A stretch of 64,000 bases of DNA from Oikopleura dioica (GCA_907165135.1 OU015568.1:12028001-12092000), one strand, 5' to 3'. Positions 14,200-26,100 are shown, counted from the stretch's first letter. Notes: a model not told the origin generated them from the letters alone. Program-made: numbers and translations.

Positions 14200-17100
14200 A
14201 TGGAAGAGTATCATGTTATCGTTAGAGATCTTGCCGAGAAGTTGGAAAAGGAAGATGATCGTCTTTTCAGGTGCTTCGGGCAGCTGGGGATTCATATTTA
14301 CGGTTTTAGAACGCCGAATAAATTTTGGCAAGAGGACAAGGCCTTCTTTTTCATGACGAGGGAAAATCCGGTTAGAAAGCTTTTCTTGGCAATTTCAAGC
14401 AATAAAATATTTGATAATATCATCTTAGGTAAGCCAATACCGTCATATTTTTTAATAACAAGTCCTAGTTGCCATCATTGCAAACTGCCTTCAATTAGGA
14501 AGAGTTCAATGAATTGTTCGATTCATTTTTTATGAGTCCCTGTTCTTTGACCTTTGAAAAAGCAAGTTATGAGCACCTTCCGAATGGTGACCGCGGTGAG
14601 CTTTCAGATTTCCTTGACGCGACGGAAATTTACTTCCTGTGGATTTTCATTGTTGAAATGGTTGTCAAAATTATGGCACTTGGTTTTTGCCTGCATAAGA
14701 ATTCTTACTTGACGAATGGCTGGAACATCATGGATTTTGTGGTTGTTTCTACTGGTATTCTGGGTAAGAGGCAAATATTTAATTTACGAAAGGCTTCGTT
14801 AGTACCAAAAATATCGGTAAACAGATTTCGTTCTATGAAAGAACCTGTATCTTTTCCGATTATCTGGTTCAAAATCAAAGAACTACCGGTGTAAAAGGAA
14901 GGTCCTACCGAGATTCGAACTCGGATTGGTGGATTCAAAGTCCACAGTGATAGCCATTACACCATAGGACCACGGAGGTGGCGCTGCTCAAAAGCACTAT
15001 TGTATACTAACCTAAGAGCCTCAGCGCGCACTGCACAGTTGTCTCTGTTTCAAACTCTGATTTAGACATGTATGGCGAGGTTTTATTTAAACTGCTTGGA
15101 CTTGATCCATCATTACTGTCAAAGATGAAATTGCTGAAAATGGGGCGAGTTTTCCGCCCGCTGAAAATGATCTCTAACTCTCCTTCTTTACAAGCTTAGG
15201 TTCCTCAAAGTTTCAATAAAACAGGAAAATTAGGCTTCTGAACCTCGAATAAAGTCGTTATGTCTGCAATTCTTAAAGCTCTAGGACCCATTTTCAACAT
15301 TTTCATTCTCCTCGTCTTCTTCATCGTCGTTTTCGCCATCGTTGGCGTCGAGTTCTACGCCGGAGGATACCACTCTCACTGTGTCAGGAAGGCTTTGAAA
15401 TCATTTTCAATTATCTGATCAAATTATTTTTCAATCCGAAAAGTGCTGAAGGCGAGATTTACGGTGAGAACCAACTCTGTGTCGGCAACGTGAACACAAC
15501 AAACGGAGTCTCGTGGTCTGCCCGTGCTCCTTACACATGTCCACCGGAGGTAAGAGTAATTTTACACATGTAAAATGCACCATCAAGGAATTCACTTTTC
15601 TTGGGAGCGCCTTTTCCGGTAAAAAAATTTTTTAGTTTTCCTGCGAAATCGATGAAACGGGCCCGTTCGACGGGATTATTAACTTTGACGATGTGCTGTT
15701 TGGAATGCTTGTAAGTTGACTTTCTAAAATCAAACGGGAGGACGTGAGCTTCGAGATAAACGCAAGCTGAAAACTTGAAGCCTAGCACTCGGAGATAAGG
15801 AAAATCCTGGTCGCACTTGAGGCTTTTAAAATAAATTTTTTTAAAAAGAAAAGTTTTGTTTCATAATTTTTCTGACTTACCAGGTCGTTTCAGACGGTTT
15901 TTCAAATTCTGACGATGGAATCGTGGACAGCAATTCTCTACTTGTCGAACGACGGAACAACGAACGGAAATGCTCTCAACTCTATAATCTTCGTCTTAAT
16001 GGTAGTGATCGGCGCTCTCTTCATGCTCAATCTGGTAATTGGAGTTCTAAGTGGCGAGTTTTCGAAGGAAAGGGAGCGCGTCGAAAAGCGCAACGCGTAT
16101 TTGGCTATGAGGGAAGATAAGGATGTCAACTCAGGAAAACGCGGTTTTCAGAGTCATAATTTTCCTTGATATTTTACTGCAAAAACCGACTCTTAAGCGA
16201 TGAATGGTTATTTGAGGTGGATACAAGAGGGGGAAGCAATAATGAAAGCTGAAGAAGAAGCTGAAGTTCTTCAAACTCGACTTAGTCTTCGCGCAAGGCG
16301 CCGAGCTACCGCGCTACCAGCTGGCTTTGGAATTCCTGGAGAAGAAGAAGAAGAAGAAGCGGAAGAAGAAGTTTTAGATGAAATAGATGATGAGGAGCCC
16401 GAAGAATCTTGGGGAAGTAAGATTCAGCGTGGAGTAGAAGCGTTTAGGCGAGGATCGTAAAATTGCTTGTTCTAGAGCGGCTCTAGTAGAGCCGAGTTTG
16501 TTTACTCTTGCAAAAATGTGGATTAAAATGCCTGTAGGATCGGTCTCATTCTCGGATTATAGGCTATAATTTATATAATAATATATAATATAATAATAAT
16601 ATAATAATATATATTTAATTTATAGCGTTTAAAAGTCGTAAAAAGTTTCCTTTTTCAGATCCTCTTGTTAGGGCACAAATAAGAGCCCTAGTCAGGACAC
16701 AATTCTGGTTCTGGCTCATCTTATCCCTTGTTTTGATCAATACATTGCTAAGATGTTCCATTCACTACAAGTATGTTTTAAAAACGCATTGATTCTTCAC
16801 ACTTCTAAATTTAGCATGCCTACCTGGTACGACAATTTACTCTCAAAGCTGGAAATAACTTTTTTGGTGTTTTTCACCGTGGAACTTTTGCTCAAATGGT
16901 TTGGCCTTGGATCAGAGGTTTACTTTCAATCATATTTCAATATTTTCGACCTGATTGTTATTGCTTTATCTTGGTTGTATTATATTATAAAGGCTTTTTT
17001 CCCGGAGTTTTCTCTCGGAATTAGTATTTTAAGAGCTCTTAGGCTTCTCAAAGGATGAGTTCACTATTTAGTTTAGCAATATCAAACGCACATTTGCGTG

Positions 17101-20100
17101 ATGATTGTCTATTAAGATATTATCTCCAATAAACCCTAAGGAACTCTCTGATAGCCTTCAAAGTCACCTCAGGAACGGGAATTACGATGCGTGAATCAAT
17201 ACTTAATCCTGCAATGCAAAGAAATAAGACACAAGCAAACTCACTTTCTAAAATTGAAGAGTTTAGTAAGTAAGTTTTTTGGGAAAAATAAAAAGAATTA
17301 TTCAGAATTTATTGAATGAACAGTGACTTGAACTGACCCAGCACTTTGGCTAAAGCCAGAGTAGTAATCTTCGCTCATCATCTTTAGGAGATGACGAACG
17401 AGTAAAGGCACAAGCCATAAAGCCTTGTGATTCAGTCGACTCTGGTTGTCAGAGTTTTCAGTATCCATTTCCCCTTACTGGATCAGGGTTTCTGAAAATG
17501 TAGATATAAAAATCAATAATTTATCTGAAAAACTTACAGGAGAGAAGAAGGCGACGGACCGTGTTGCTAGCATAGTGGTTCGGTGCTAACTGATGTTTTT
17601 AAGATTTTCGCGCAGAATAAGGGATGCGTTCTAGAGAGGGTCTAGAAAACATCACGCGATCGTAATTGTCAGTGATTCTTATCAGCGCTTAATTTTTATT
17701 TTTTATCAACAACAACACACTAGAAACGCTCATCATTAGTATGCAGCAATCTGATTCCTCTGTGAAAGTATGGAAAGACCTGTCAAACTTGGTTATCTCT
17801 CTGATGAGCTCCGTTAAATCGATTCTTGCTCTGATATTTTTGTTGTTTCTGATGCTCATGGTCTTTGCCTTGCTAGGAATGCAACTTTTTGGCGGTCGAT
17901 CTAACTTTCCCGATGGAATTCCAAACCAGAATTATGACCGCTTTTTCCCCGCTTTTCTAACTGTCTTCCAAGTACTTACTGGTGAGGACTGGGTTTCGAT
18001 TATGCACACTACTATCAATGGTATGGGTGGAGTCGATGGTGGAGGGTTCATTTATTCTGTCTATTACGTAATTGTCACTTTGATCGGTAACTTTGTACTG
18101 CTCAACGTCTTCCTTGCCATCGCTGTCGACAATCTTGCCAATGCCGCTGAACTGAGTGAAGATGAGGAGGAAGTAGAAGAAGCGCGGAAAAGTAACATAA
18201 ATCGCGAGCTGGACCCGATAATCGGCGAAGATGATAGCAACGGAGAAGAGGCTGAGGCGAAGCTTCCACCGCTAATTGACGACTCTTCACTGTTCATTTT
18301 CGAGAAAACGAATCCGATCCGCGTGGCCTGCACGAAGGTCAACTCAAGCCCACTCTTCATCAACTTCATCTTGGTGATCATCGGCCTCAGCAGCCTTGCC
18401 CTAGCCGCTGATGATCCGATCGCAACAAATCCAGATTTGGTTACAGTACTCTACTACGCAGACTTGATTTTCACATGCGTTTTTATTTTTGAAACGATCG
18501 TGAAAATTATAGCGCTTGGTTTTATTTTGCATCCCGGCTCATTTATGCGGTCTATTTGGAATGTTTTGGACATTATTGTTGTGGTAGGCGCAATTCTCGG
18601 CCTCGTTCTTGTCGGTGAGCCGCCAGGGAGAGACTGCGATGATGAGCTAACTCTCTTCCTCGAACCGAATTGCAAAAATGAAGAGCAGGAGAAAGTCGAA
18701 GACGGATCAGATCTGGGCTTTATCAAGACTCTCCGTGTGTTTCGCGTACTTCGGCCGTTAAAATCTGTTCAACGCCTTCCAAAGCTGCAAGCAGTTTTCA
18801 ATGGCTTCATTACGTCGATTGTCAATGTCGCACCAATTTTATCTATTTATGGACTCTTTATGCTCATCTTTTCTGTAGTTGGAATGGAGCTCTTTGGTGG
18901 CAAATTTTTCTCTTGCTCGGATCCAACAAAAATGACTGAAGCAGAATGTACAGGACACAGTATCGATGAAGTCGACAGTCTTGGCCATCCGATTAGCATT
19001 TCTGAAAATGAATGGCTCCAGCACGACTTTCACTTTGACGACTTTCCCAACGCCTTTTTGTCGCTCTACGTGTTCTCAACCGGCGCGAGCTGGCCTGATG
19101 GGCTGTGGAACTCGATAGAAACCACAAAAGTTGACCGCGGACCTGTAAAGTACAGCCGCATGGATTACGCCATATTTTATGTGGTTTTTATAATCGTCTT
19201 TCCCTTCTTTTTCGTCAACGTTTTCATCGCTTTTGTTATTCTAACGTTTCAATCTGAAGGAGATGATCAGCTTGCGGAGCAGGAAAGGGGCACAATCGTA
19301 GTTGGGATTTATTCTTTTACAATTCAAAAGAAGCCCTCGAAAAGTGTTCTCTCGAAAAAACCGTAATTCAATGCATTGACTATGCTATCAACGCAAAGCC
19401 AATAAGCAAGTATATGCCAAAGAATAAAAAGTCGTATCAGTTCATTATTTGGAAAATCGTCACCAATGAATATTTCGACAACTTTATCCTTCTACTTATT
19501 ATTCTCAATACAGTAACGTTGATGATAAAACATTACTCGATGTCAATCGAGTTTGAATTCATGCTGTCTGTGACCAATGTTTGCTTTACCACGCTGTTTT
19601 CAATTGAATGTACGATGAAAATTTTTGGCTTCGGGCCGTTGAACTACTTTTCTGACGCTTGGAACTTGTTTGATTTCGTTACGGTTGTCGGCTCTTTGCT
19701 CGACACTTCTCTGGTATTTCTCCTCCCGGAAGATTCCAACGTTAACCTCGCGATTTTGCGACTTTTCCGCGCTGCCCGTTTACTGAAGCTTCTGAGACAA
19801 AGTGAAAATATCAGAATTCTGCTTTGGACCTTCATGCAATCTCTCAAGTCATTACCTTATGTGTGCTTACTTATCTTTCTTTTATTCTTTATCTATTCAA
19901 TTGTCGGAATTCAAATGTTTGGCAACATCAAATTGGATGAAGAGTCAGATATTAATTACCGGAACAACTTTCAAAACTTTGGCATGGCTATGTTACTTCT
20001 CTTCAGAGTTTCAACTGGAGACGGGTGGCAAGGAATCATGCTCAGTTGCATTGATGCAGAATGCGATCCAGCGACGCTGAAAGCCGGGTCGACGAAACGA

Positions 20101-21382
20101 TGTGGGAGTAAAGTTGCGATTCCCTTCTTTACGACTTTCATTTTTTTAGGTAAATTTCCTTGAGAGCTCATCACTTAGCCGCGCTCAAGTTTCAAGTTAT
20201 TTATCTTCGTTTTCAGGCTCGTTTATCATGCTAAATCTCTTCGTGGCTGTCATCATGGATCAGTTTGAGTTTCTAACCAAAGACTCATCAGTGCTAGGGC
20301 CTCATCATTTAGACAAATTCGCTGCGGCTTGGTCAGACTACGACCCTCACGCAACGTGGAAGTGCAAGTACACCGACGTGCAAAAGATACTCACGCGACT
20401 TCATCCGCCGCTAGGAATGGGAGATAACGCGCCGCAAAGATTGGTCTATAAGCGTCTTATAGACATGGATTGCCCACTAGATGAGGATGGAAAGGTGCAC
20501 TTTACGACAGTTCTTATTGCCATGATACGCTGCAGTCTGGATGTCTATCAGATTTCTAAAGAAGACTCTGATTATGCAACTTTCAAGGATAAGTTAAAAC
20601 TTGACGCTGAGTTTCGGGAGCAGGTGGAAAAGCAATGGTGTCAACTTTCGAAGTCGAGAATCGACGAAATTATACCTCCGGAGAACTCGAGGAATTTAAA
20701 AACTCTGACTTTGGGAAAGATCTATGGAATATTATTAATGTTTGAGCATTGGCAGGTTTATGAAGATAGAAGGGACATGATAAGAAGGACGAAGTTTGAA
20801 ATGAACAAGAAGAAGGAGATTCAAGATATGATCCAGCGCCTAAAAATGTACGAAGCGAGAGAAAAATTGGCGAATAGAGGGATTGAACTGCCAGTGATAC
20901 TCCCCAAAAAAGAAGAAAAAATTCAACCTTCTTTGGCGATTTTAACGATGTCAAAAGAAGAAGTCTCCGACAAGTATATTTTGGAAGATAACTTCTCCAG
21001 ACCTGAGATTGATCAGGAAGTAGAGCAAACTCAACGAAGATCGATGCCACGAATATATGTTCAAGGGTCGATAGATCAAGGAAATGGTCAAAAATGTTGG
21101 AATAAAGCGTCGTTAAGCATAATAAGACCATGTAAAACAGCCGAAGTAACATCGGAAGAAACAATGGAAGATGAAAAACTGAGTGAGCAGTCCTTTTTTC
21201 CAATTCCGAAACCAAGGCTCACTAAAACTCTATCTGTGCCTATTCCAAAGCCTCGACTATCGACATATTCTTCTTTTGTCGACTACAGAACCTCGATTGC
21301 AGATTCCTGCAGTCTCCCATCAATGAATTTTTCCGAGAGTGAGGATGACCACGACTGCTTTGAGACTGAATTACCTCTCTAA
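14200..21382 (+). CDS. Cav2: Voltage-gated calcium channel alpha-1 subunit, Cav2 (non-L-type)-like, four domains, many short introns
   Basis: Four 6-TM repeats with S4 segments ([13 protein letters not shown]; [12 protein letters not shown]; [14 protein letters not shown]; [14 protein letters not shown]). Cav2-type [11 protein letters not shown] loop, AID-like MNGYLRWI, C-terminal EF-hand region [21 protein letters not shown]. Start codon approximate. Confidence 0.92.
14900..14971 (-). tRNA. trnQ-TTG: tRNA-Gln (anticodon TTG)
   Basis: Reverse complement GGTCCTATGGTGTAATGGCTATCACTGTGGACTTTGAATCCACCAATCCGAGTTCGAATCTCGGTAGGACCT: cloverleaf, anticodon arm GTGGA-CTTTGAA-TCCAC, TTCGAA T-loop. Lies in a Cav intron. 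Confidence 0.95.
16570..16624. repeat. AT-only low-complexity (TAA/TATAA)n tract in a Cav intron
   Basis: ttatataataatatataatataataataatataataatatatatttaatttata. Confidence 0.7.
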
Positions 21383-21484
21383 ATAAACATGCCCAGCTTT
21401 TTTCAAACATTTTTTGAATTTGCTGTTTTTTATTTACTTTGTCATGAAAGTGAAAAAATGCTGGTCAGTATAGTTTGTGGGAAA

Positions 21485-22826
21485 TTATTTGACGATGGCG
21501 AGGAGCATATCTTTGTAGTCGCCGCAGCAGTCTCCGTCGATATCGTCAGCCAAGGAGGAGCCAAAAGATTCCTCGTACTTTTCTTTAATGGTCTGGAGTC
21601 CCCACTAAAATATCTTTTAGAAACAAAAGTTTTTGGGGGAGCTTATCGAACCTCAGAAGTGAAGATAATAGCGCGCTGGAGTGCGTCATCGTCAGTTCCA
21701 AGACCCTTGAGGGCTTTGTGGGCATTGCGGGCAAAGTAGTAAGCGGGATCCAAGGCCATTCGGACGATGGATTTGTAAGCTCGCTTTAGGTCTCCGTTCA
21801 CTTCGTTTTCAATGGCACCTAGGAGATCGTAGTCCTCAGAAATCTAAAAGGAAAGAATGTAAATAAAGAAGTCTCAAAAAAGTTCAAAGGCCCATGAGAA
21901 CATTCGCGTTTGCTAAGTTCAAGAGAGATCATAATTTATTTTTATGATCTGGTAAATTTGCATATCGATTTGAAGTGTCCGCAGAGCGGACGTGTGTGAT
22001 GTTTTTACAATTTCAAAAATTTACCTCCTGATATTTGGCGTTGATGAGTCGGATTTGCATCCAGGATCGACGAGCGCAGATTCGAGTGAAGACGGATTCG
22101 TCAGTGAAGAACCATCTGTCTTCTCCGGCCTAAATAAGAATTTGATTAAAGCATTTTTAAACGGAAATTACATCAAAGAGCTCTTGAGCATCCTCAGCAG
22201 CCTGGTCCTCGTCGATAGCATCAAGGCCTTCTTCTCGGGCGCAGCAAAGAATAGCAATCATGAATCGCTCGAACTCTCGTCGGCAGTTGTCCTGGATATC
22301 ATCCATAAGAGCATTTCCATATCGCTCTTCGTAAACTTCCTTGAGCTCCTCAAGGTAGCCGTTGGGTCGAGCACAGAGGATTTCGCAGATGACATCATCA
22401 TCTGATGAGCCGATGCCCTTCATGGCCTGGTTGAGGCATCGAGCATCATATTGTTTTGGAGTCAAGAGCATTCCTGAAAGGATTTGATATCAACGAGGAA
22501 TACGCCGCGTCGCTCTTACCCTTGATGACGTGTCGAAGTCGATCTCGTCGAACTCGTGAATCAACTCGATCGTAGAGGGACTCGCCGAAGAGAGACATGA
22601 ACTGCTCCTGGATCTCTTGTCGCTGAGCGTTCGATCTGTTCGGTAGAATATCATTGACCACGTCGTCATCTATCCTTCCTCTGCCGATGGCATCTTCAAG
22701 GGCAACGGCATCGGCTTCCGCGTCGAAGTCTTCGGCTTCAGTGCAAGTTCCTTCGAAGCCAGGGAGAAGCTCCTGGATGACGTCAATAACGTGCTCAATA
22801 AGAAGAATACCAAGAATAGCTCCCAT
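21485..22826 (-). CDS. Annexin (four repeats, multi-exon), acidic, N-terminal MG
   Basis: Repeat motifs MKGIGSSDDDVICEILCAR, GEDRWFTDESVF and LKGLGTDDDAL, with C-terminus DCCGDYKDMLLAIVK* (stop at 21485-21487). Convergent with the Cav gene. Confidence 0.92.
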
Positions 22827-23174: not shown

Positions 23175-26100
23175 TTACTTTTTGAAGAAGCTTTCCGACG
23201 GAGTGATCTTATCGCCCTTGTACATGATGTGCGAGGAACCGCTCGTCTTCGAGTTACTGTAGCTGACATCGACTTGCTGATCAAAGATGTGGTACGCTCT
23301 CTCATGGCCTTGTTCCATGAAGTAGCTCTCAGCATTGAAGCGTTCCTCCCTCGAGACTTTGATCCCATCAATGTTTTCGATGCTTGGCACGTGCCAAATC
23401 AGACAAGGACGGTGAAGCATTCTTCGCGAGACACCATTTCCAATCATTGAAATTTCTTTGAGATGCGTCAGAGGTCGAAGTTTGGTGATTTCTTCAACTT
23501 CCGCGATTCTGTTAACGCCGAGGTACAGTCTCTTGAGATTGACTAGCGCGCGCAGATGGTTCAGATCAGAAACGCGGTTGGAGTCCATGTGAAGCTCTTC
23601 CAGTCGCCACATTGATTGAAAGCTCGTCTGGTCAATGTTTTTGATTCGATTCTTGTCCAGCACCAAATGTCTCAAGTTTGAGCAGCCGTCTAATCCGTCA
23701 ACTTTCATGATATCGTTCGATTCCAAGAAAAGCGATCGCAAGGAAGGAAACCTGTGAAGCTGCAAGAGCGTCATGTCTTTGATCTTATTCGAGCCCAAAT
23801 GAAGAACTTCCAGACTCGGCATTATGCTTTCTGTTTCTTTGATCAAGTAGGAGTCAGCTTTGGATTGACCGGCTTGACTGTACTGAGAACGGGTCATCTG
23901 ATTGCGCTGCTGCTTCGTTAGTGGGAAGACGGACTCAATGTTGTTTTTGCTCAGACAAAGCGTTTTCAACAACTTGAGTTCGACCAGACCAGAGAAGTGG
24001 ACAAGCTGATTTCCGATCAAGTTTAAAGATGTCAAACTGATGAGCTGGGAGACATCCAGGTGAACTGATCGAATCTCGCATTCTTGAAGGTCCAGATCAT
24101 CGATCTCTTTCAAATTCACTGTCGCTTGCCCATTTATGTAGCCAAATTTTTCGATCAAGAAATCATTTGTCAATCGTCCGCCAAAGATATCCGATGCTCT
24201 CGCGATGTCTTTGAGCCGAACAGGTAGCCCATTGAGCGACTTGAGCTGCTGAAGATGGAACAGTATAAACAAGTTACAATCTTCCTTCGATGACAGCGGA
24301 TTTCCTTCAATGTCCAGAACTTCTAGCTTCTCACAGATTTTCAAGTGCGCCAACTCGTTCGCATCGCCAAGTTTGTTATGGGACAAATAGATTTCAATGA
24401 CGTTTGTGAGATTTCGGAAAGATTTGATCGAAGTAAGACGATTTCCACTGGCGTTGATTGATTTCAATGCTTGAAGAGTTGACTCGACATTGATGTCCTC
24501 TACTGAATTGAATGAAATGTCGAGATCTTGAATGAACGGAAGATTATTGAGAATCTTGTTGATTGACGAGATCTCGTTGTTCCCAAGATCAATCTGACGC
24601 AATTTCGTGCAAGAAAGAAGAACTGAGACATCTGATATTTTGTTGTCGCGCGCTGAGAGAAACTTTAAGTTCGCGAGATTCCGAAGCATTGAAATGTTAA
24701 CTAAGCCCAGTTCGTCTATACATAGCGAGGTGATCTTCGTTCCAATATTTTCTGGGTGTCCGAAATCTCTCAAGAACCTTGCTGCATTCGCCAGATCTGC
24801 GTAACTATTCATTTCACCGCTTCTTCCCAGGCGCTGGACCATTTCAGAGGAGAGGATGAGCTTCTGTGCCGCGGCTCTATTCTCTGAAGTGATTCTCTTT
24901 CCATTGAAAATGCTCAGCTGCGTGAGTTTAGTGAGCGCATGCACAAGAATCGCATCGTCGTAAGTTATCGCGTTCCAGTCGAGTGAAAGAGATTCTAAGC
25001 ACGGCGTCTTCTTTCTCAGATGATTGATAAGAGATGCATACTGGCGAAGGCGATTCCAGCTCAGGTCAAGCATCGTTACATTTTTCAGCTCAGGAAGATC
25101 CACGGAAGTGATTTCGTTTACAGAGAGGTTCAAGCTTCGCAAATGTCGTAAGTTTCTGATGCTCTTTCCAATGCTCGTCAATTTGTTGCACGCTAGATTG
25201 AGTACATGTAGATTCGGCACAGTGGTCAAGTTCGGTAACTCCGACAAGTTTAATCCGACCAGGGACAGATCAGTAAGCGCAGACGTCTCGAATGGAATAA
25301 GCTCAAGTATCGTTGGAGCATTGTCCAGTGTTATTGGAGCGCAGCTCAACGCGGACAGGTCTTTATCTTCGTCCTGGAGTGTTCTGACGGGTGTCTCGGC
25401 GTACGTTTGCTTCTCTGCTTCTGTCAGTGGTATTGATTTGATTAAATGTGACTGAATATTTTGGTAAGCACCGGCGTAACTGATGATTATATTACCTGGT
25501 TAACATACTCAATATCGATGAGATACTCTGGACATAAATAGTTGGAGTCAAAGAGCGTAAATTTTCTCCCGCTTTTCGTATCTTCATAGACCGAGTCGCT
25601 GTGTGAAAAATGCCTTGGATTGACTTTTTCGTTTGTAGAAGTTGTCATTGGAGTGCTCTTGCCCATATAAGCGCGGCAAACGATGAGTTGTGCGGTCGAG
25701 ATGGCTTCTGATTTATTGTAGTTTTTATGAAAGCGGACATCAGCGTCGAATGGTGAAGTGCAGAGAACAAGGTTGTCTTTTGAGCAGCCGTTCTCAATGA
25801 GTTCGGTGGTCTTTTCGATGTCGCTCGGATCAGATTGGACGAAGGCGTAAGTCTAAATTAGTGTGATTATTTTTTCTCATTATGTTGGATATTTTACCTG
25901 AGGAATGACAAACTGAGAAGTCTCATTGACCTCATCAAGCTCTTCATCAAAAGCAAGCCTCTTTGGCCGATGGAAAATTTTCGTGATTCTATTCAGCTTG
26001 AAGTTTTCAACGCCCAAAGCTGACTTTCTTTTATCCATGCGTACTTCGCTCACTGTTTTAGTCAGAAGATTTTCCATCTGATTCCAAATTTGTTTGACCT

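What the first reader, a model, noticed from the sequence alone, without database searches (positions are those of the whole stretch)
15918..20022. Cav2-like channel with a non-canonical E-E-A-D selectivity filter
Seen: the pore loops read TMESW (E at 15918-20), TGEDW (E at 17984-86), TGASW (GCG=Ala at 19085-87) and TGDGW (GAC=Asp at 20020-22). Established: Cav1/Cav2 use EEEE, Cav3 EEDD, Nav DEKA and Nav2 DEEA, and mutagenesis shows the domain III Glu is especially important for high-affinity Ca2+ binding. Seen: all four S4 segments and the long ORFs are intact, and GAG to GCG with neighbouring G to S and a domain IV E to D change looks like coordinated divergence rather than decay. Inference: a fast-evolving Cav2 paralog that may have become a monovalent-permeable or poorly selective voltage-gated channel. 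I do not recall this filter being described.
Basis: partly seen in the sequence, partly recalled or inferred. Interest (0 to 1): 0.85.

Follow-up and report, generated by a model that had tools for sequence, protein, structure and literature searches.

The report
Larvacean Cav2 channel with E-E-A-D filter
The tunicate Oikopleura dioica and its close relatives carry a well-conserved, transcribed Cav2-type calcium-channel gene in which two of the four glutamates thought universal for calcium selectivity are replaced (Ala in domain III, Asp in domain IV). This breaks a rule stated for all animal Cav1/Cav2 channels and can be tested by expressing the channel.

Summary
The four pore-loop codons read E (GAA 15918-20), E (GAG 17984-86), A (GCG 19085-87) and D (GAC 20020-22).

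- **Organism and gene.** The window is Oikopleura dioica. I modelled a complete 16-exon, 1731-aa gene (14200-21382, + strand) with four intact voltage sensors, a recognisable beta-subunit site, and EF-hand/GPHH and IQ domains.
- **Not an error or a pseudogene.** Ala is kept with a synonymous codon change (GCG vs GCA) in four other O. dioica lineages, in an independent DNA run and in RNA reads. dN/dS in the channel exons is 0.004-0.03 at near-saturated dS.
- **Older than the species.** Two more distant metagenomic relatives (60-78% identical, Oikopleura-style introns) also read STGAGW.
- **Placement.** Trees place the gene inside the tunicate Cav2 clade: (Ciona,(a canonical EEEE larvacean gene with Fritillaria-type introns,(Ala clade))). 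The stem leading to the Ala clade is long.
- **Paralog or ortholog.** No canonical O. dioica Cav2 turned up in two protein searches. It is therefore more likely the oikopleurid Cav2 ortholog than an extra paralog, but this is unproven.
- **Function.** Reduced Ca2+ selectivity or mixed cation permeation is inferred, not shown.
- **Caveat.** A 60-nt insert with an in-frame TAG (15194-15253) must be spliced out through non-standard ends.
- **Earlier notes.** They cover other odd channels in this genome, not this one.

The parts
14200..21382 (+). Whole coding region of the Cav2-lineage alpha1 gene: 16 exons, 1731 aa, ATG at 14200, TAA at 21380-82.
   Evidence: Spliced model built from tblastn against the O. 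dioica protein CBY08747.1 (P0153), P0151 and Saccoglossus Cav2, and from reading the DNA. It gives a single open frame. Introns: 8 GT-AG, 6 GA-AG, 1 odd.
14200..14428 (+). Exon 1 (N-terminus and start of domain I S1).
14469..14498 (+). Exon 2 (30 nt, domain I S1: [10 protein letters not shown]).
   Evidence: followed by a GA-AG intron
14563..14763 (+). Exon 3 (domain I S1-S3).
15066..15193 (+). Exon 4 (domain I S3-S4; K-K-R-R-K charge ladder kept).
15194..15253 (+). 60-nt lineage-specific insert between the Gln and Val codons of SLQ|VV (domain I S4-S5). It contains an in-frame TAG and is absent from the Norwegian reference. The frame is kept only by precise removal, with ends GC..AA, CT..AG or AG..AA (3-nt AAG repeat at both ends). 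Either a new non-canonical intron or a private disruptive insertion.
   Evidence: no RNA data at this place
15254..15387 (+). Exon 5 (domain I S5).
15444..15549 (+). Exon 6 (domain I turret).
   Evidence: An RNA joint starts at 15549 in run X15, in 2 reads (table 5c; no joint met the tool's listing threshold).
15636..15710 (+). Exon 7 (domain I turret, FSCEIDE...FGML).
   Evidence: (the 27 letters between the two sides of the joint translate to FSCEIDDVG)
15894..16134 (+). Exon 8 (domain I pore loop TMESW, S6, start of the I-II linker).
15918..15920 (+). Filter residue, domain I: GAA = Glu310.
16198..16416 (+). Exon 9 (I-II linker with the beta-subunit AID core [10 protein letters not shown]).
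16626..16770 (+). Exon 10 (domain II S1).
16815..17053 (+). Exon 11 (domain II S1-S4, ends LRALRLLK).
17155..17172 (+). Exon 12: 18-nt micro-exon (AFKVTS) that completes domain II S4, between two GA-AG introns.
   Evidence: (CBY08747.1 reads LLKAFKVTPVWKDL)
17769..19282 (+). Exon 13 (1514 nt): end of domain II S4 to domain III S6, with both the domain II and domain III pore loops.
17984..17986 (+). Filter residue, domain II: GAG = Glu661.
18614..18700 (+). Clade-specific 29-aa insert in the extracellular domain III S3-S4 loop with two cysteines (GEPPGRDC...[12 protein letters not shown]). It is shared with L018 and L019 and absent from the EEEE sister gene and other Cav2.
19085..19087 (+). Filter residue, domain III: GCG = Ala1028, where all other Cav1/Cav2 examined have Glu.
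19345..20149 (+). Exon 14 (III-IV linker and domain IV S1 to most of S6).
20020..20022 (+). Filter residue, domain IV: GAC = Asp1319 (GAT = Asp in L003 and L004).
20217..21086 (+). Exon 15 (end of domain IV S6, EF-hand/GPHH, IQ, proximal tail).
21141..21382 (+). Exon 16 (distal tail, ends ...[11 protein letters not shown], stop TAA). An AATAAA overlaps the stop at about 21382-21387.

Best explanation
This is the Cav2-lineage (N/P/Q/R-type) voltage-gated channel alpha1 gene of Oikopleura dioica. On the stem of the oikopleurid larvaceans its selectivity ring changed from E-E-E-E to E-E-A-D, during a burst of protein change. The new state has since been held by strong purifying selection. The protein keeps everything needed to be a voltage-gated, beta-subunit- and calmodulin-associated channel: four charged S4 segments, the AID core, and EF-hand/GPHH and IQ domains. 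What I infer is this. With one carboxylate removed in domain III and one shortened in domain IV, the single high-affinity Ca2+ site of HVA channels is weakened. In sea water the open channel would then pass a mixed Na+/Ca2+ current, with Ca2+ block of monovalent flux much reduced, rather than an almost pure Ca2+ current. Shown here: the sequence state, its conservation, transcription, and phylogenetic placement. Inferred: the permeation consequence, and that this is the only Cav2 of O. dioica.
For: - **Codons and alignment to the EEEE columns:**
- **Cav2 identity:** phmmer against PDB gives 610/594/580 bits to Cav2.3/2.2/2.1, against 488 for Cav1, 291 for Cav3 and 237 for Nav (domain IV). Pfam finds Ion_trans, GPHH and Ca_chan_IQ. 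ML trees place it in a tunicate Cav2 clade (100/100), sister to a canonical larvacean gene (94.9/92 excluding Ciona).
- **Conservation:** Ala is present in the window and in L001, L002 (Norwegian reference), L003 and L004, with GCG vs GCA. Asp reads GAC vs GAT. dN/dS is 0.02-0.03 (exon 13) and 0.004 (exon 14), with dS of 0.36 to >1.7.
- **Depth of the change:** more distant relatives L018 and L019 (60-78% identical, GT-AG/GA-AG short introns) read FSTGAGW.
- **Reads:** DNA run X1 agrees. About 10 RNA reads (X15, X16) cover 18900-19299 and read GCA. By my codon count on that table, 12 of 14 differences are synonymous.
- **Intact S4, AID core and IQ:**
- **Literature:** PMC4436565 says EEEE is present in all Cav1/Cav2 of every known species. 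Single E-to-A changes in Cav2.2 (domains I and IV) leave only small inward Ba2+ current, and the domain I and all-four mutants pass outward monovalent current (PMC6899504). From my own knowledge, in Cav1.2 the domain III Glu contributes most to Ca2+ affinity (Yang et al. 1993; Ellinor et al. 1995).
Against: - No electrophysiology exists, so selectivity cannot be read from four residues. Cav3 channels with one EEDD ring range from Ca2+- to Na+-selective depending on extracellular loops (PMC4436565).
- Three carboxylates remain, as does the Asp next to the domain II Glu, so useful Ca2+ flux may persist.
- In mammalian Cav2, filter E-to-A mutants traffic poorly. The natural protein must have compensated, and the compensation could also restore selectivity.
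- RNA support is thin: about 10 reads at the domain III loop, from a sister lineage, and none at the other three filter codons.
- The domain IV Asp is documented only within the O. dioica complex.
- The allele in this window carries a 60-nt insert with a stop whose removal is unverified.
Confidence: 0.6

Rival explanations
1. It is an extra, neofunctionalised Cav2 paralog. A duplication in the larvacean stem gave an EEEE copy (like L006) and an Ala-type copy. O. dioica still has the canonical copy elsewhere for transmitter release, and the EEAD copy does something new.
For: The topology (L006,(Ala clade)) fits a stem duplication as well as it fits orthology. The Ala-clade stem is long (0.64), and the window changes 69 of 376 invariant Cav2 positions against 33 for L006, as is typical after duplication. 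PMC5818475 says an Oikopleura Cav2 has Phe at the EF-hand F-helix position, whereas this gene has Gln there in all lineages. That hints at another gene, but no accession is given. Cav2 is described as never lost in animals (PMC6259924).
Against: Searches with the canonical larvacean protein (candidates 546-1736 aa) and with a profile containing it (842-2679 aa) returned no O. dioica or other close relative, although the Norwegian proteome is in that database (CBY08747.1 was found). L006 has Fritillaria-style AG/AT introns with YAY triplets (PMC13326754), so it comes from another family and the tree simply mirrors the species tree. All four further larvacean-type loci in the JGI metagenome scan were Ala-type.
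Confidence: 0.3
2. The channel is still an essentially Ca2+-selective HVA channel. The loss of the domain III carboxylate is compensated by other pore changes (Ser next to the filter in domains I and III, remodelled turrets, S6 changes), so the filter change is functionally mild.
For: Three acidic ring residues and the domain II Asp are kept. There are many coordinated pore and S6 substitutions. If it is the only Cav2 it presumably must still trigger release. In Cav3 the ring alone does not set selectivity.
Against: In every tested HVA channel, removing one ring glutamate lowers divalent affinity or current (and Yang 1993 / Ellinor 1995 from my own knowledge). No new acidic residue appears in the domain III loop relative to Ciona or L006, which already have WPE/WPD.
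Confidence: 0.2
3. The protein works mainly as a voltage sensor with little or no ion flux (non-ionotropic signalling), like non-conducting Cav1.1 in teleost muscle.
For: Voltage sensors and cytoplasmic interaction domains are under the strongest constraint. Cav2.2 with filter Glu-to-Ala changes conducts little inward current. Non-ionotropic Cav signalling is documented (PMC11017947, listed).
Against: The pore loops and S6 segments are as conserved among lineages as the sensors (exon 13/14 dN/dS 0.004-0.03; L018 and L019 keep the STGAGW loops and S6). That would not be expected for a pore that no longer matters.
Confidence: 0.1
4. Artefact or dying gene: an assembly error at 19085-87, or a pseudogene.
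For: The 60-nt insert with an in-frame TAG at 15194-15253 in this assembly. Other agents' notes report private gene-breaking variants in this individual's genome. None of the indexed RNA runs listed held the stretch.
Against: The same Ala occurs in six independent assemblies and contigs, in a second DNA run and in RNA reads. dN/dS is 0.004-0.03 at saturated dS. A complete 1731-aa frame is recovered.
Confidence: 0.02

Closest known systems
Cav2 (N-, P/Q-, R-type; invertebrate Cav2 / cacophony / UNC-2) alpha1 subunits, nearest named relative Ciona intestinalis Cav2 (UniRef F6Q8W5)
   Same: Four-domain 24-TM architecture, charged S4 in all domains, AID core, EF-hand/GPHH and IQ, TxExW-type pore loops in domains I and II. 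Falls inside the Cav2 clade with tunicates sister to vertebrates.
   Different: Ring is E-E-A-D instead of E-E-E-E. Very short II-III linker, an extra Cys-containing loop in domain III S3-S4, a 10-aa insert in the domain III turret, no C-terminal DxWC-type PDZ ligand (ends ETELPL), and Gln at the EF-hand F-helix Tyr/Phe position.
Canonical larvacean Cav2 on ENA metagenome contig ERZ27265005:k141_1649587 (L006; P0012)
   Same: Sister gene (100/100 against all non-tunicate Cav2; 94.9/92 for L006 plus the Ala clade excluding Ciona). About 53% identical over domains II-III. Shares tunicate/larvacean signatures such as WPDxLWNSI and MLxCxDAECD, and is of similar size (about 1750 aa).
   Different: Keeps EEEE. 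None of the three L006 intron positions I located is shared with the window gene, and its introns are AG/AT with YAY triplets as in Fritillaria. Its branch is half as long.
Cav3 (T-type), ring EEDD
   Same: Asp in domain IV; lower-affinity ring than EEEE.
   Different: Not related at that level (291 vs 610 bits). Cav3 has Asp, not Ala, in domain III, and lacks the AID and IQ that this gene has.
Nav2 (DEEA) and Nav1 (DEKA) channels; NALCN (EEKE/EKEE/EEEE)
   Same: Natural four-domain channels in which one ring position is uncharged (Ala in domain IV of Nav), with selectivity tuned by ring asymmetry. The domain III loop here (GASWPDGLW) even resembles the Nav domain IV loop (SAGWDGLL; from my memory, not tested).
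   Different: A different clade (about 230 bits for Nav and about 100 for NALCN). The uncharged residue sits in domain III, and no Lys is present.
Engineered Cav2.2/Cav2.1/Cav1.2 ring mutants (E to A/Q/K)
   Same: The same kind of change as the laboratory mutants used to define the Ca2+ site (PMC6899504).
   Different: Here the change is natural, ancient, combined with E to D in domain IV and many second-site changes, and maintained by selection.

Membership tests
Cav2 (HVA, non-L-type) alpha1 | Four homologous 6-TM domains with positively charged S4 segments | tested here: met
   Ion_trans in every domain piece. Full-length colinear matches to Cav2.1-2.3 structures. S4 ladders K-K-R-R-K, R-R-K-K, K-R-R-R-K and R-R-R-K-R aligned with Ciona, Bos and Mus.
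Cav2 (HVA, non-L-type) alpha1 | Descent: groups with Cav2 and not with Cav1, Cav3 or Nav in a phylogeny | tested here: met
   IQ-TREE, 1176 and 1214 columns. Inside bilaterian Cav2, in a tunicate clade with Ciona (100/100), with Cav1 as outgroup.
Cav2 (HVA, non-L-type) alpha1 | E-E-E-E high-field-strength ring | tested here: not met
   E310, E661, A1028, D1319. The review states EEEE for all known Cav1/Cav2.
Cav2 (HVA, non-L-type) alpha1 | AID in the I-II linker for the Cav-beta subunit (QQxExxLxGYxxWIxxxE) | tested here: inconclusive
   The [10 protein letters not shown] core (G, Y, W, I, E) is kept, but the upstream QQ-E-L part is replaced by KDVNSAM. Binding was not tested.
Cav2 (HVA, non-L-type) alpha1 | C-terminal EF-hand/pre-IQ (GPHH) and IQ calmodulin site | tested here: met
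   PF16905 at 1.6e-16 and PF08763 at 7.7e-12. [15 protein letters not shown] aligns with the IQ of Ciona and others.
Cav2 (HVA, non-L-type) alpha1 | C-terminal PDZ ligand (D/E-x-W-C) for Mint/RIM-BP-type scaffolds | tested here: not met
   The C-terminus is ...[11 protein letters not shown], identical in lineage L003. The motif definition is from my own knowledge; PMC11405698 (abstract) shows only that Mint PDZ domains bind Cav2 C-termini.
Cav2 (HVA, non-L-type) alpha1 | High Ca2+ selectivity and high-voltage activation | not testable with these tools
   Needs electrophysiology.
Cav3 (T-type) | EEDD ring, no AID or IQ, groups with Cav3 | tested here: not met
   Domain III is Ala, not Asp. AID core and IQ are present. 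291 bits to Cav3.2 against 610 to Cav2.3.
Nav1/Nav2 | DEKA / DEEA ring and Nav clade membership | tested here: not met
   The ring starts with Glu and has no Lys. About 237 bits to Nav structures.

The most novel reading that the evidence does not exclude
The E-E-A-D channel is the only Cav2 of oikopleurid larvaceans. If so, a free-swimming chordate with fast synapses either triggers transmitter release through a channel that lacks the canonical Ca2+-selectivity ring, or has handed that job to another channel, while its Cav2 became a mixed-cation or Na+-carrying voltage-gated channel. Another note on the same genome describes a Nav-family channel with a D-E-M-E ring. That raises the possibility, untested, of a wider re-assignment of Na+ and Ca2+ roles among four-domain channels in this lineage.
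Probability: 0.4. Interest if true: 0.9.

Novelty: new variant of a known kind. Interest (0 to 1): 0.78.

Why it matters
The four-glutamate ring is the textbook determinant of Ca2+ selectivity. A specialist review states that it is invariant in all animal Cav1/Cav2 channels.

Here nature has removed the domain III carboxylate and shortened the domain IV one in a Cav2. It has then kept that state under strong constraint across several larvacean species. This offers three things:

- A natural experiment on how many ring charges an HVA pore needs, and on which second-site changes rescue folding and trafficking.
- A direct test of whether presynaptic Ca2+ entry in a chordate can run without an EEEE Cav2.
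- A ready pair for mutagenesis, since the E-E-A-D gene has a close EEEE sister.

O. dioica is a laboratory model with knock-down tools and single-cell data, so the question is tractable.

Tried and rejected
- **RNA runs.** On repeat, none of the indexed RNA runs listed held the stretch. I therefore laid three un-indexed 2026 oligo-dT runs. They proved to come from a Bergen-like lineage about 20% divergent in DNA, so most reads could not map and depth is not a measure of expression.
- **P0011 as a possible O. dioica paralog.** It is an intronless gene whose relatives are cnidarian. Rejected.
- **P0012/L006 as the O. dioica canonical paralog.** Rejected as O. dioica because of its Fritillaria-type AG/AT introns with YAY triplets and the absence of any close named relative. 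Kept as the canonical larvacean sister gene.
- **Piecewise L006 alignment to get a full-length profile.** MAFFT mis-stacked the homologous domains. I used a two-row alignment instead.
- **treekit with automatic MAFFT.** It timed out. I aligned and ran FastTree/IQ-TREE by hand.
- **PMC5818475's remark on an Oikopleura Cav2 with Phe in the EF-hand.** No accession is given and there is nothing in the supplement, so it could not be followed.
- **Alternative domain III pore exon (NALCN-style swapping).** All tblastn matches in the 64-kb window lie in the exons described, and the loop sits inside a 1.5-kb exon. Rejected.
- **60-nt insert as a repeated element.** No other copy in the window.
- **Earlier findings searched by sequence.** Blank, which is uninformative.

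Full report
**1. Observation**

| Domain | Loop | Filter codon | Coordinates |
|---|---|---|---|
| I | LTMESW | GAA, Glu | 15918-20 |
| II | LTGEDW | GAG, Glu | 17984-86 |
| III | STGASW | GCG, Ala | 19085-87 |
| IV | STGDGW | GAC, Asp | 20020-22 |

In a MAFFT alignment with 21 other sequences these residues fall in the four columns that read E/E/E/E in nearly all of them. The comparison set holds Cav2 of Ciona, amphioxus, vertebrates, echinoderm, hemichordate, insect, flatworm, molluscs and Nematostella, plus three Cav1. The one exception is an oyster isoform, noted at the end.

**2. Organism and gene model**

A protein search returned four near relatives of the 541-aa exon product. One of them is CBY08747.1 / E4XB67, 'unnamed protein product [Oikopleura dioica]'. 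The window is therefore O. dioica, as other agents' notes on this genome also say.

Guided by that protein, by metagenomic relatives and by Saccoglossus Cav2, I built a 16-exon model. It runs from ATG 14200 to TAA 21380-82 and encodes 1731 aa in one open frame.

- Eight introns are GT-AG and six are GA-AG. High numbers of GA-AG introns are a documented peculiarity of O. dioica (PMC7072748).
- An 18-nt micro-exon (17155-17172, AFKVTS) between two GA-AG introns completes the domain II S4. The '[10 protein letters not shown]' at the head of the long ORF is intron.
- All four S4 segments keep their charge ladders. The AID core ([10 protein letters not shown]), EF-hand/GPHH and IQ are present.
- Filter residues in the model are E310, E661, A1028 and D1319.

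One blemish remains. A 60-nt insert at 15194-15253 sits between the Gln and Val codons of the conserved SLQ|VV. It contains an in-frame TAG and is absent from the Norwegian reference, where the codons are contiguous. It has no other copy in the window.

Only its precise removal keeps the frame. The possible ends (GC..AA, CT..AG, AG..AA; a 3-nt AAG repeat flanks it) are not the G*-AG type usual in this species. I had no reads tool left to test it. It is either a young non-canonical intron or a private gene-breaking insertion in the sequenced individual. Other agents report such private lesions in this genome. This affects the status of this allele, not of the gene.

**3. Real, conserved and transcribed**

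Five independent sequences of the O. dioica complex carry Ala in domain III:

| Sequence | Source | Protein identity to the window |
|---|---|---|
| Window | this assembly | - |
| L003 | ENA metagenome | 96% |
| L001 | ENA metagenome | 93% |
| L004 | JGI metagenome | 91% |
| L002 | Norwegian reference FN653033 | 84% |

- The Ala codon is GCG in the window and GCA in all the others. The domain IV Asp is GAC in the window and GAT in L003 and L004.
- Nei-Gojobori estimates give dN/dS of 0.02-0.03 for exon 13 and 0.004 for exon 14. dS is 0.36 against L003 and 1.7 to saturation against the rest. The cytoplasmic tail is looser, at 0.13.
- Logan contigs of a separate DNA run (X1) show no variant at 19085-86.
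- About ten reads from two 2026 oligo-dT RNA runs cover 18900-19299 and read GCA. Of the 14 listed differences from the window, I worked out from that table that 12 are synonymous and two lie in one codon (D1013N, as in the Bergen-type contigs). Two reads also join 15549 to the next exon.
- The RNA comes from a lineage about 20% divergent in DNA, so the low depth says little about expression.

In the Norwegian reference an assembly gap starts immediately after [10 protein letters not shown]. This truncates the public model to 832 aa and hides domain IV. It may be why the filter has gone unnoticed.

**4. What it is**

Against solved structures the two large pieces score best with Cav2. For exon 13 the scores are:

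| Family | Bits |
|---|---|
| Cav2.3 / Cav2.2 / Cav2.1 | 610 / 594 / 580 |
| Cav1 | 488 |
| Cav3 | 291 |
| Nav | 237 |
| NALCN | about 100 |

 An exhaustive HMMER search of 1.8 billion representatives found only one close relative (93%), and then Cav2 proteins at 41% identity or less.

An ML tree (33 sequences, 1176 columns) puts the gene inside bilaterian Cav2, sister to vertebrate Cav2 as expected for a tunicate. It pairs, at 100/100, with a gene on an ENA marine-metagenome contig, L006.

L006 encodes a compact, roughly 1750-aa canonical Cav2 (TMEGW, TGEDW, TGEGW, TGEAW). Two of its three introns are AG/AT with YAY triplets at both borders. That is the signature reported for Fritillaria borealis (PMC13326754). 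I therefore take it to be from the family Fritillariidae; this is an inference.

**5. How old the change is**

A scan of JGI metagenome contigs found four further larvacean-type loci (apart from L009, which is L004 again): L018, L019, L020 and L025. All are closer to this gene (57-78% identical segments) than to L006.

- L018 and L019 cover the domain III loop, and both read FSTGAGW, that is Ala.
- They share the clade-specific Cys-containing insert in the domain III S3-S4 loop.
- They have short GT-AG and GA-AG introns like Oikopleura.

A second tree with Ciona gives (Ciona,(L006,((L018,L025),(L019,(window,Norway))))). Tunicates are supported at 100/100 and L006 plus the Ala clade at 94.9/92. 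The Ala clade is supported at 100/100, on a stem of 0.64 substitutions per site.

The window protein differs at 69 of 376 positions that are invariant in twelve other Cav2. L006 differs at 33. The sequence of events was therefore a burst of change that included E to A, followed by tight conservation.

The domain IV Asp could be checked only within the O. dioica complex. The Ser next to the domain III Ala is O. dioica-specific.

**6. Ortholog or paralog?**

The gene tree equals the expected species tree (ascidian, Fritillaria-type, oikopleurids). This needs no duplication.

I made two searches designed to pull out a canonical O. dioica Cav2. One used the L006 protein (candidates 546-1736 aa). 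The other used a profile containing it (842-2679 aa). Neither found a close relative at all, although the database holds the Norwegian proteome.

Against this, a paper remarks that Oikopleura Cav2 has Phe at the EF-hand F-helix position, while this gene has Gln there in every lineage. No accession is given. I could not search the O. dioica genome itself. I put 'sole Cav2 ortholog' at roughly two in three.

**7. Mechanism**

*Shown:* a voltage-gated-channel architecture under strong constraint, with an E-E-A-D ring.

*Established knowledge:*
- The four glutamates form the single high-affinity divalent site of HVA channels.
- In Cav2.2, single E-to-A mutants (domains I and IV) keep only a small inward Ba2+ current. 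The domain I and all-four mutants pass outward monovalent current, and filter mutants traffic poorly (PMC6899504).
- In Cav1.2 the domain III Glu weighs most (Yang 1993, Ellinor 1995; my own knowledge).
- The review PMC4436565 states that EEEE is present in all Cav1/Cav2 of every known species. It also warns that in Cav3 the ring is not the only determinant.

*Inferred:* weaker Ca2+ binding, and hence a mixed Na+/Ca2+ current in sea water.

*Rivals:* compensated, still Ca2+-selective permeation; a mainly voltage-sensing, poorly conducting protein; and, on the evolutionary side, an extra paralog. Artefact or pseudogene is excluded for the gene as a whole.

**8. Novelty**

Searches for Oikopleura or larvacean calcium channels, for 'EEAD', and for non-canonical Cav2 filters found no description. 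By descent this is a Cav2. By the functional definition (EEEE) it fails. I class it as a new variant of a known kind.

Earlier notes of this scan mention other unusual channels in the same genome, among them a Nav-family D-E-M-E ring. None mentions this gene.

Noticed in passing
window 15194-15253: 60-nt insert with an in-frame TAG inside the domain I S4-S5 coding sequence. It is flanked by a 3-nt AAG repeat and absent from the Norwegian O. dioica reference. It is removable in frame only with non-G*-AG ends (GC..AA / CT..AG / AG..AA). A candidate very young non-canonical intron, or a private disruptive insertion.
   Followed up: partly
window 17054-17768: An 18-nt micro-exon (17155-17172) encoding part of an S4 voltage sensor lies between two GA-AG introns. 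Six of the gene's 15 introns are GA-AG.
   Followed up: partly
L002:13528-15626 (GCA_000209535.1, FN653033.1): A 2.1-kb run of N in the Norwegian reference starts right after [10 protein letters not shown]. It truncates the public protein CBY08747.1 to 832 aa and hides domain IV and the C-terminus. A 1059-aa gene called on the opposite strand across the gap looks spurious.
   Followed up: partly
L006:2396-7845 (ENA ERZ27265005 k141_1649587; also L007): A complete, compact canonical EEEE Cav2 gene of an unidentified larvacean. Its introns are AG...AT with YAY triplets at both borders, as described for Fritillaria borealis. A GIY-YIG/Penelope-like ORF lies downstream on the minus strand (my reading of the translated motif; not searched).
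   Followed up: partly
P0009 (Crassostrea XP_078326088.1 isoform X17), P0016 (Seison nebaliae KAI3378494.1), P0030: Other database Cav2-type proteins with a non-Glu ring residue: TGADW in domain II of an oyster isoform, TGDDW in domain II of Seison, TGDAW in domain III of P0030. They were seen only as motif strings. They may be alternative exons, prediction errors or further exceptions to the EEEE rule.
   Followed up: no
window 18614-18700: A 29-aa insert with two cysteines in the extracellular S3-S4 loop of voltage sensor III. It is conserved in L018 and L019 (PGRDC...PNC) and absent from all other Cav2 compared. Possibly a disulfide-bonded loop on the sensor.
   Followed up: no
window 21431-22826 (- strand): An annexin gene (two Pfam Annexin repeats) converges on the channel gene. 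Its poly(A) site is at 21431 (reads with T-runs), only about 50 nt from the channel's stop codon and AATAAA.
   Followed up: partly
window 23175-25349 (- strand): A single 724-aa ORF made almost entirely of leucine-rich repeats (LRR_4, LRR_8, LRR_9).
   Followed up: no
window 20330-20420 (EF-hand): The Cav2 EF-hand F-helix Tyr/Phe position implicated in GPCR/Src regulation is Gln (YTDVQKIL) in all O. dioica lineages examined. This conflicts with a published remark that Oikopleura has Phe there.
   Followed up: partly
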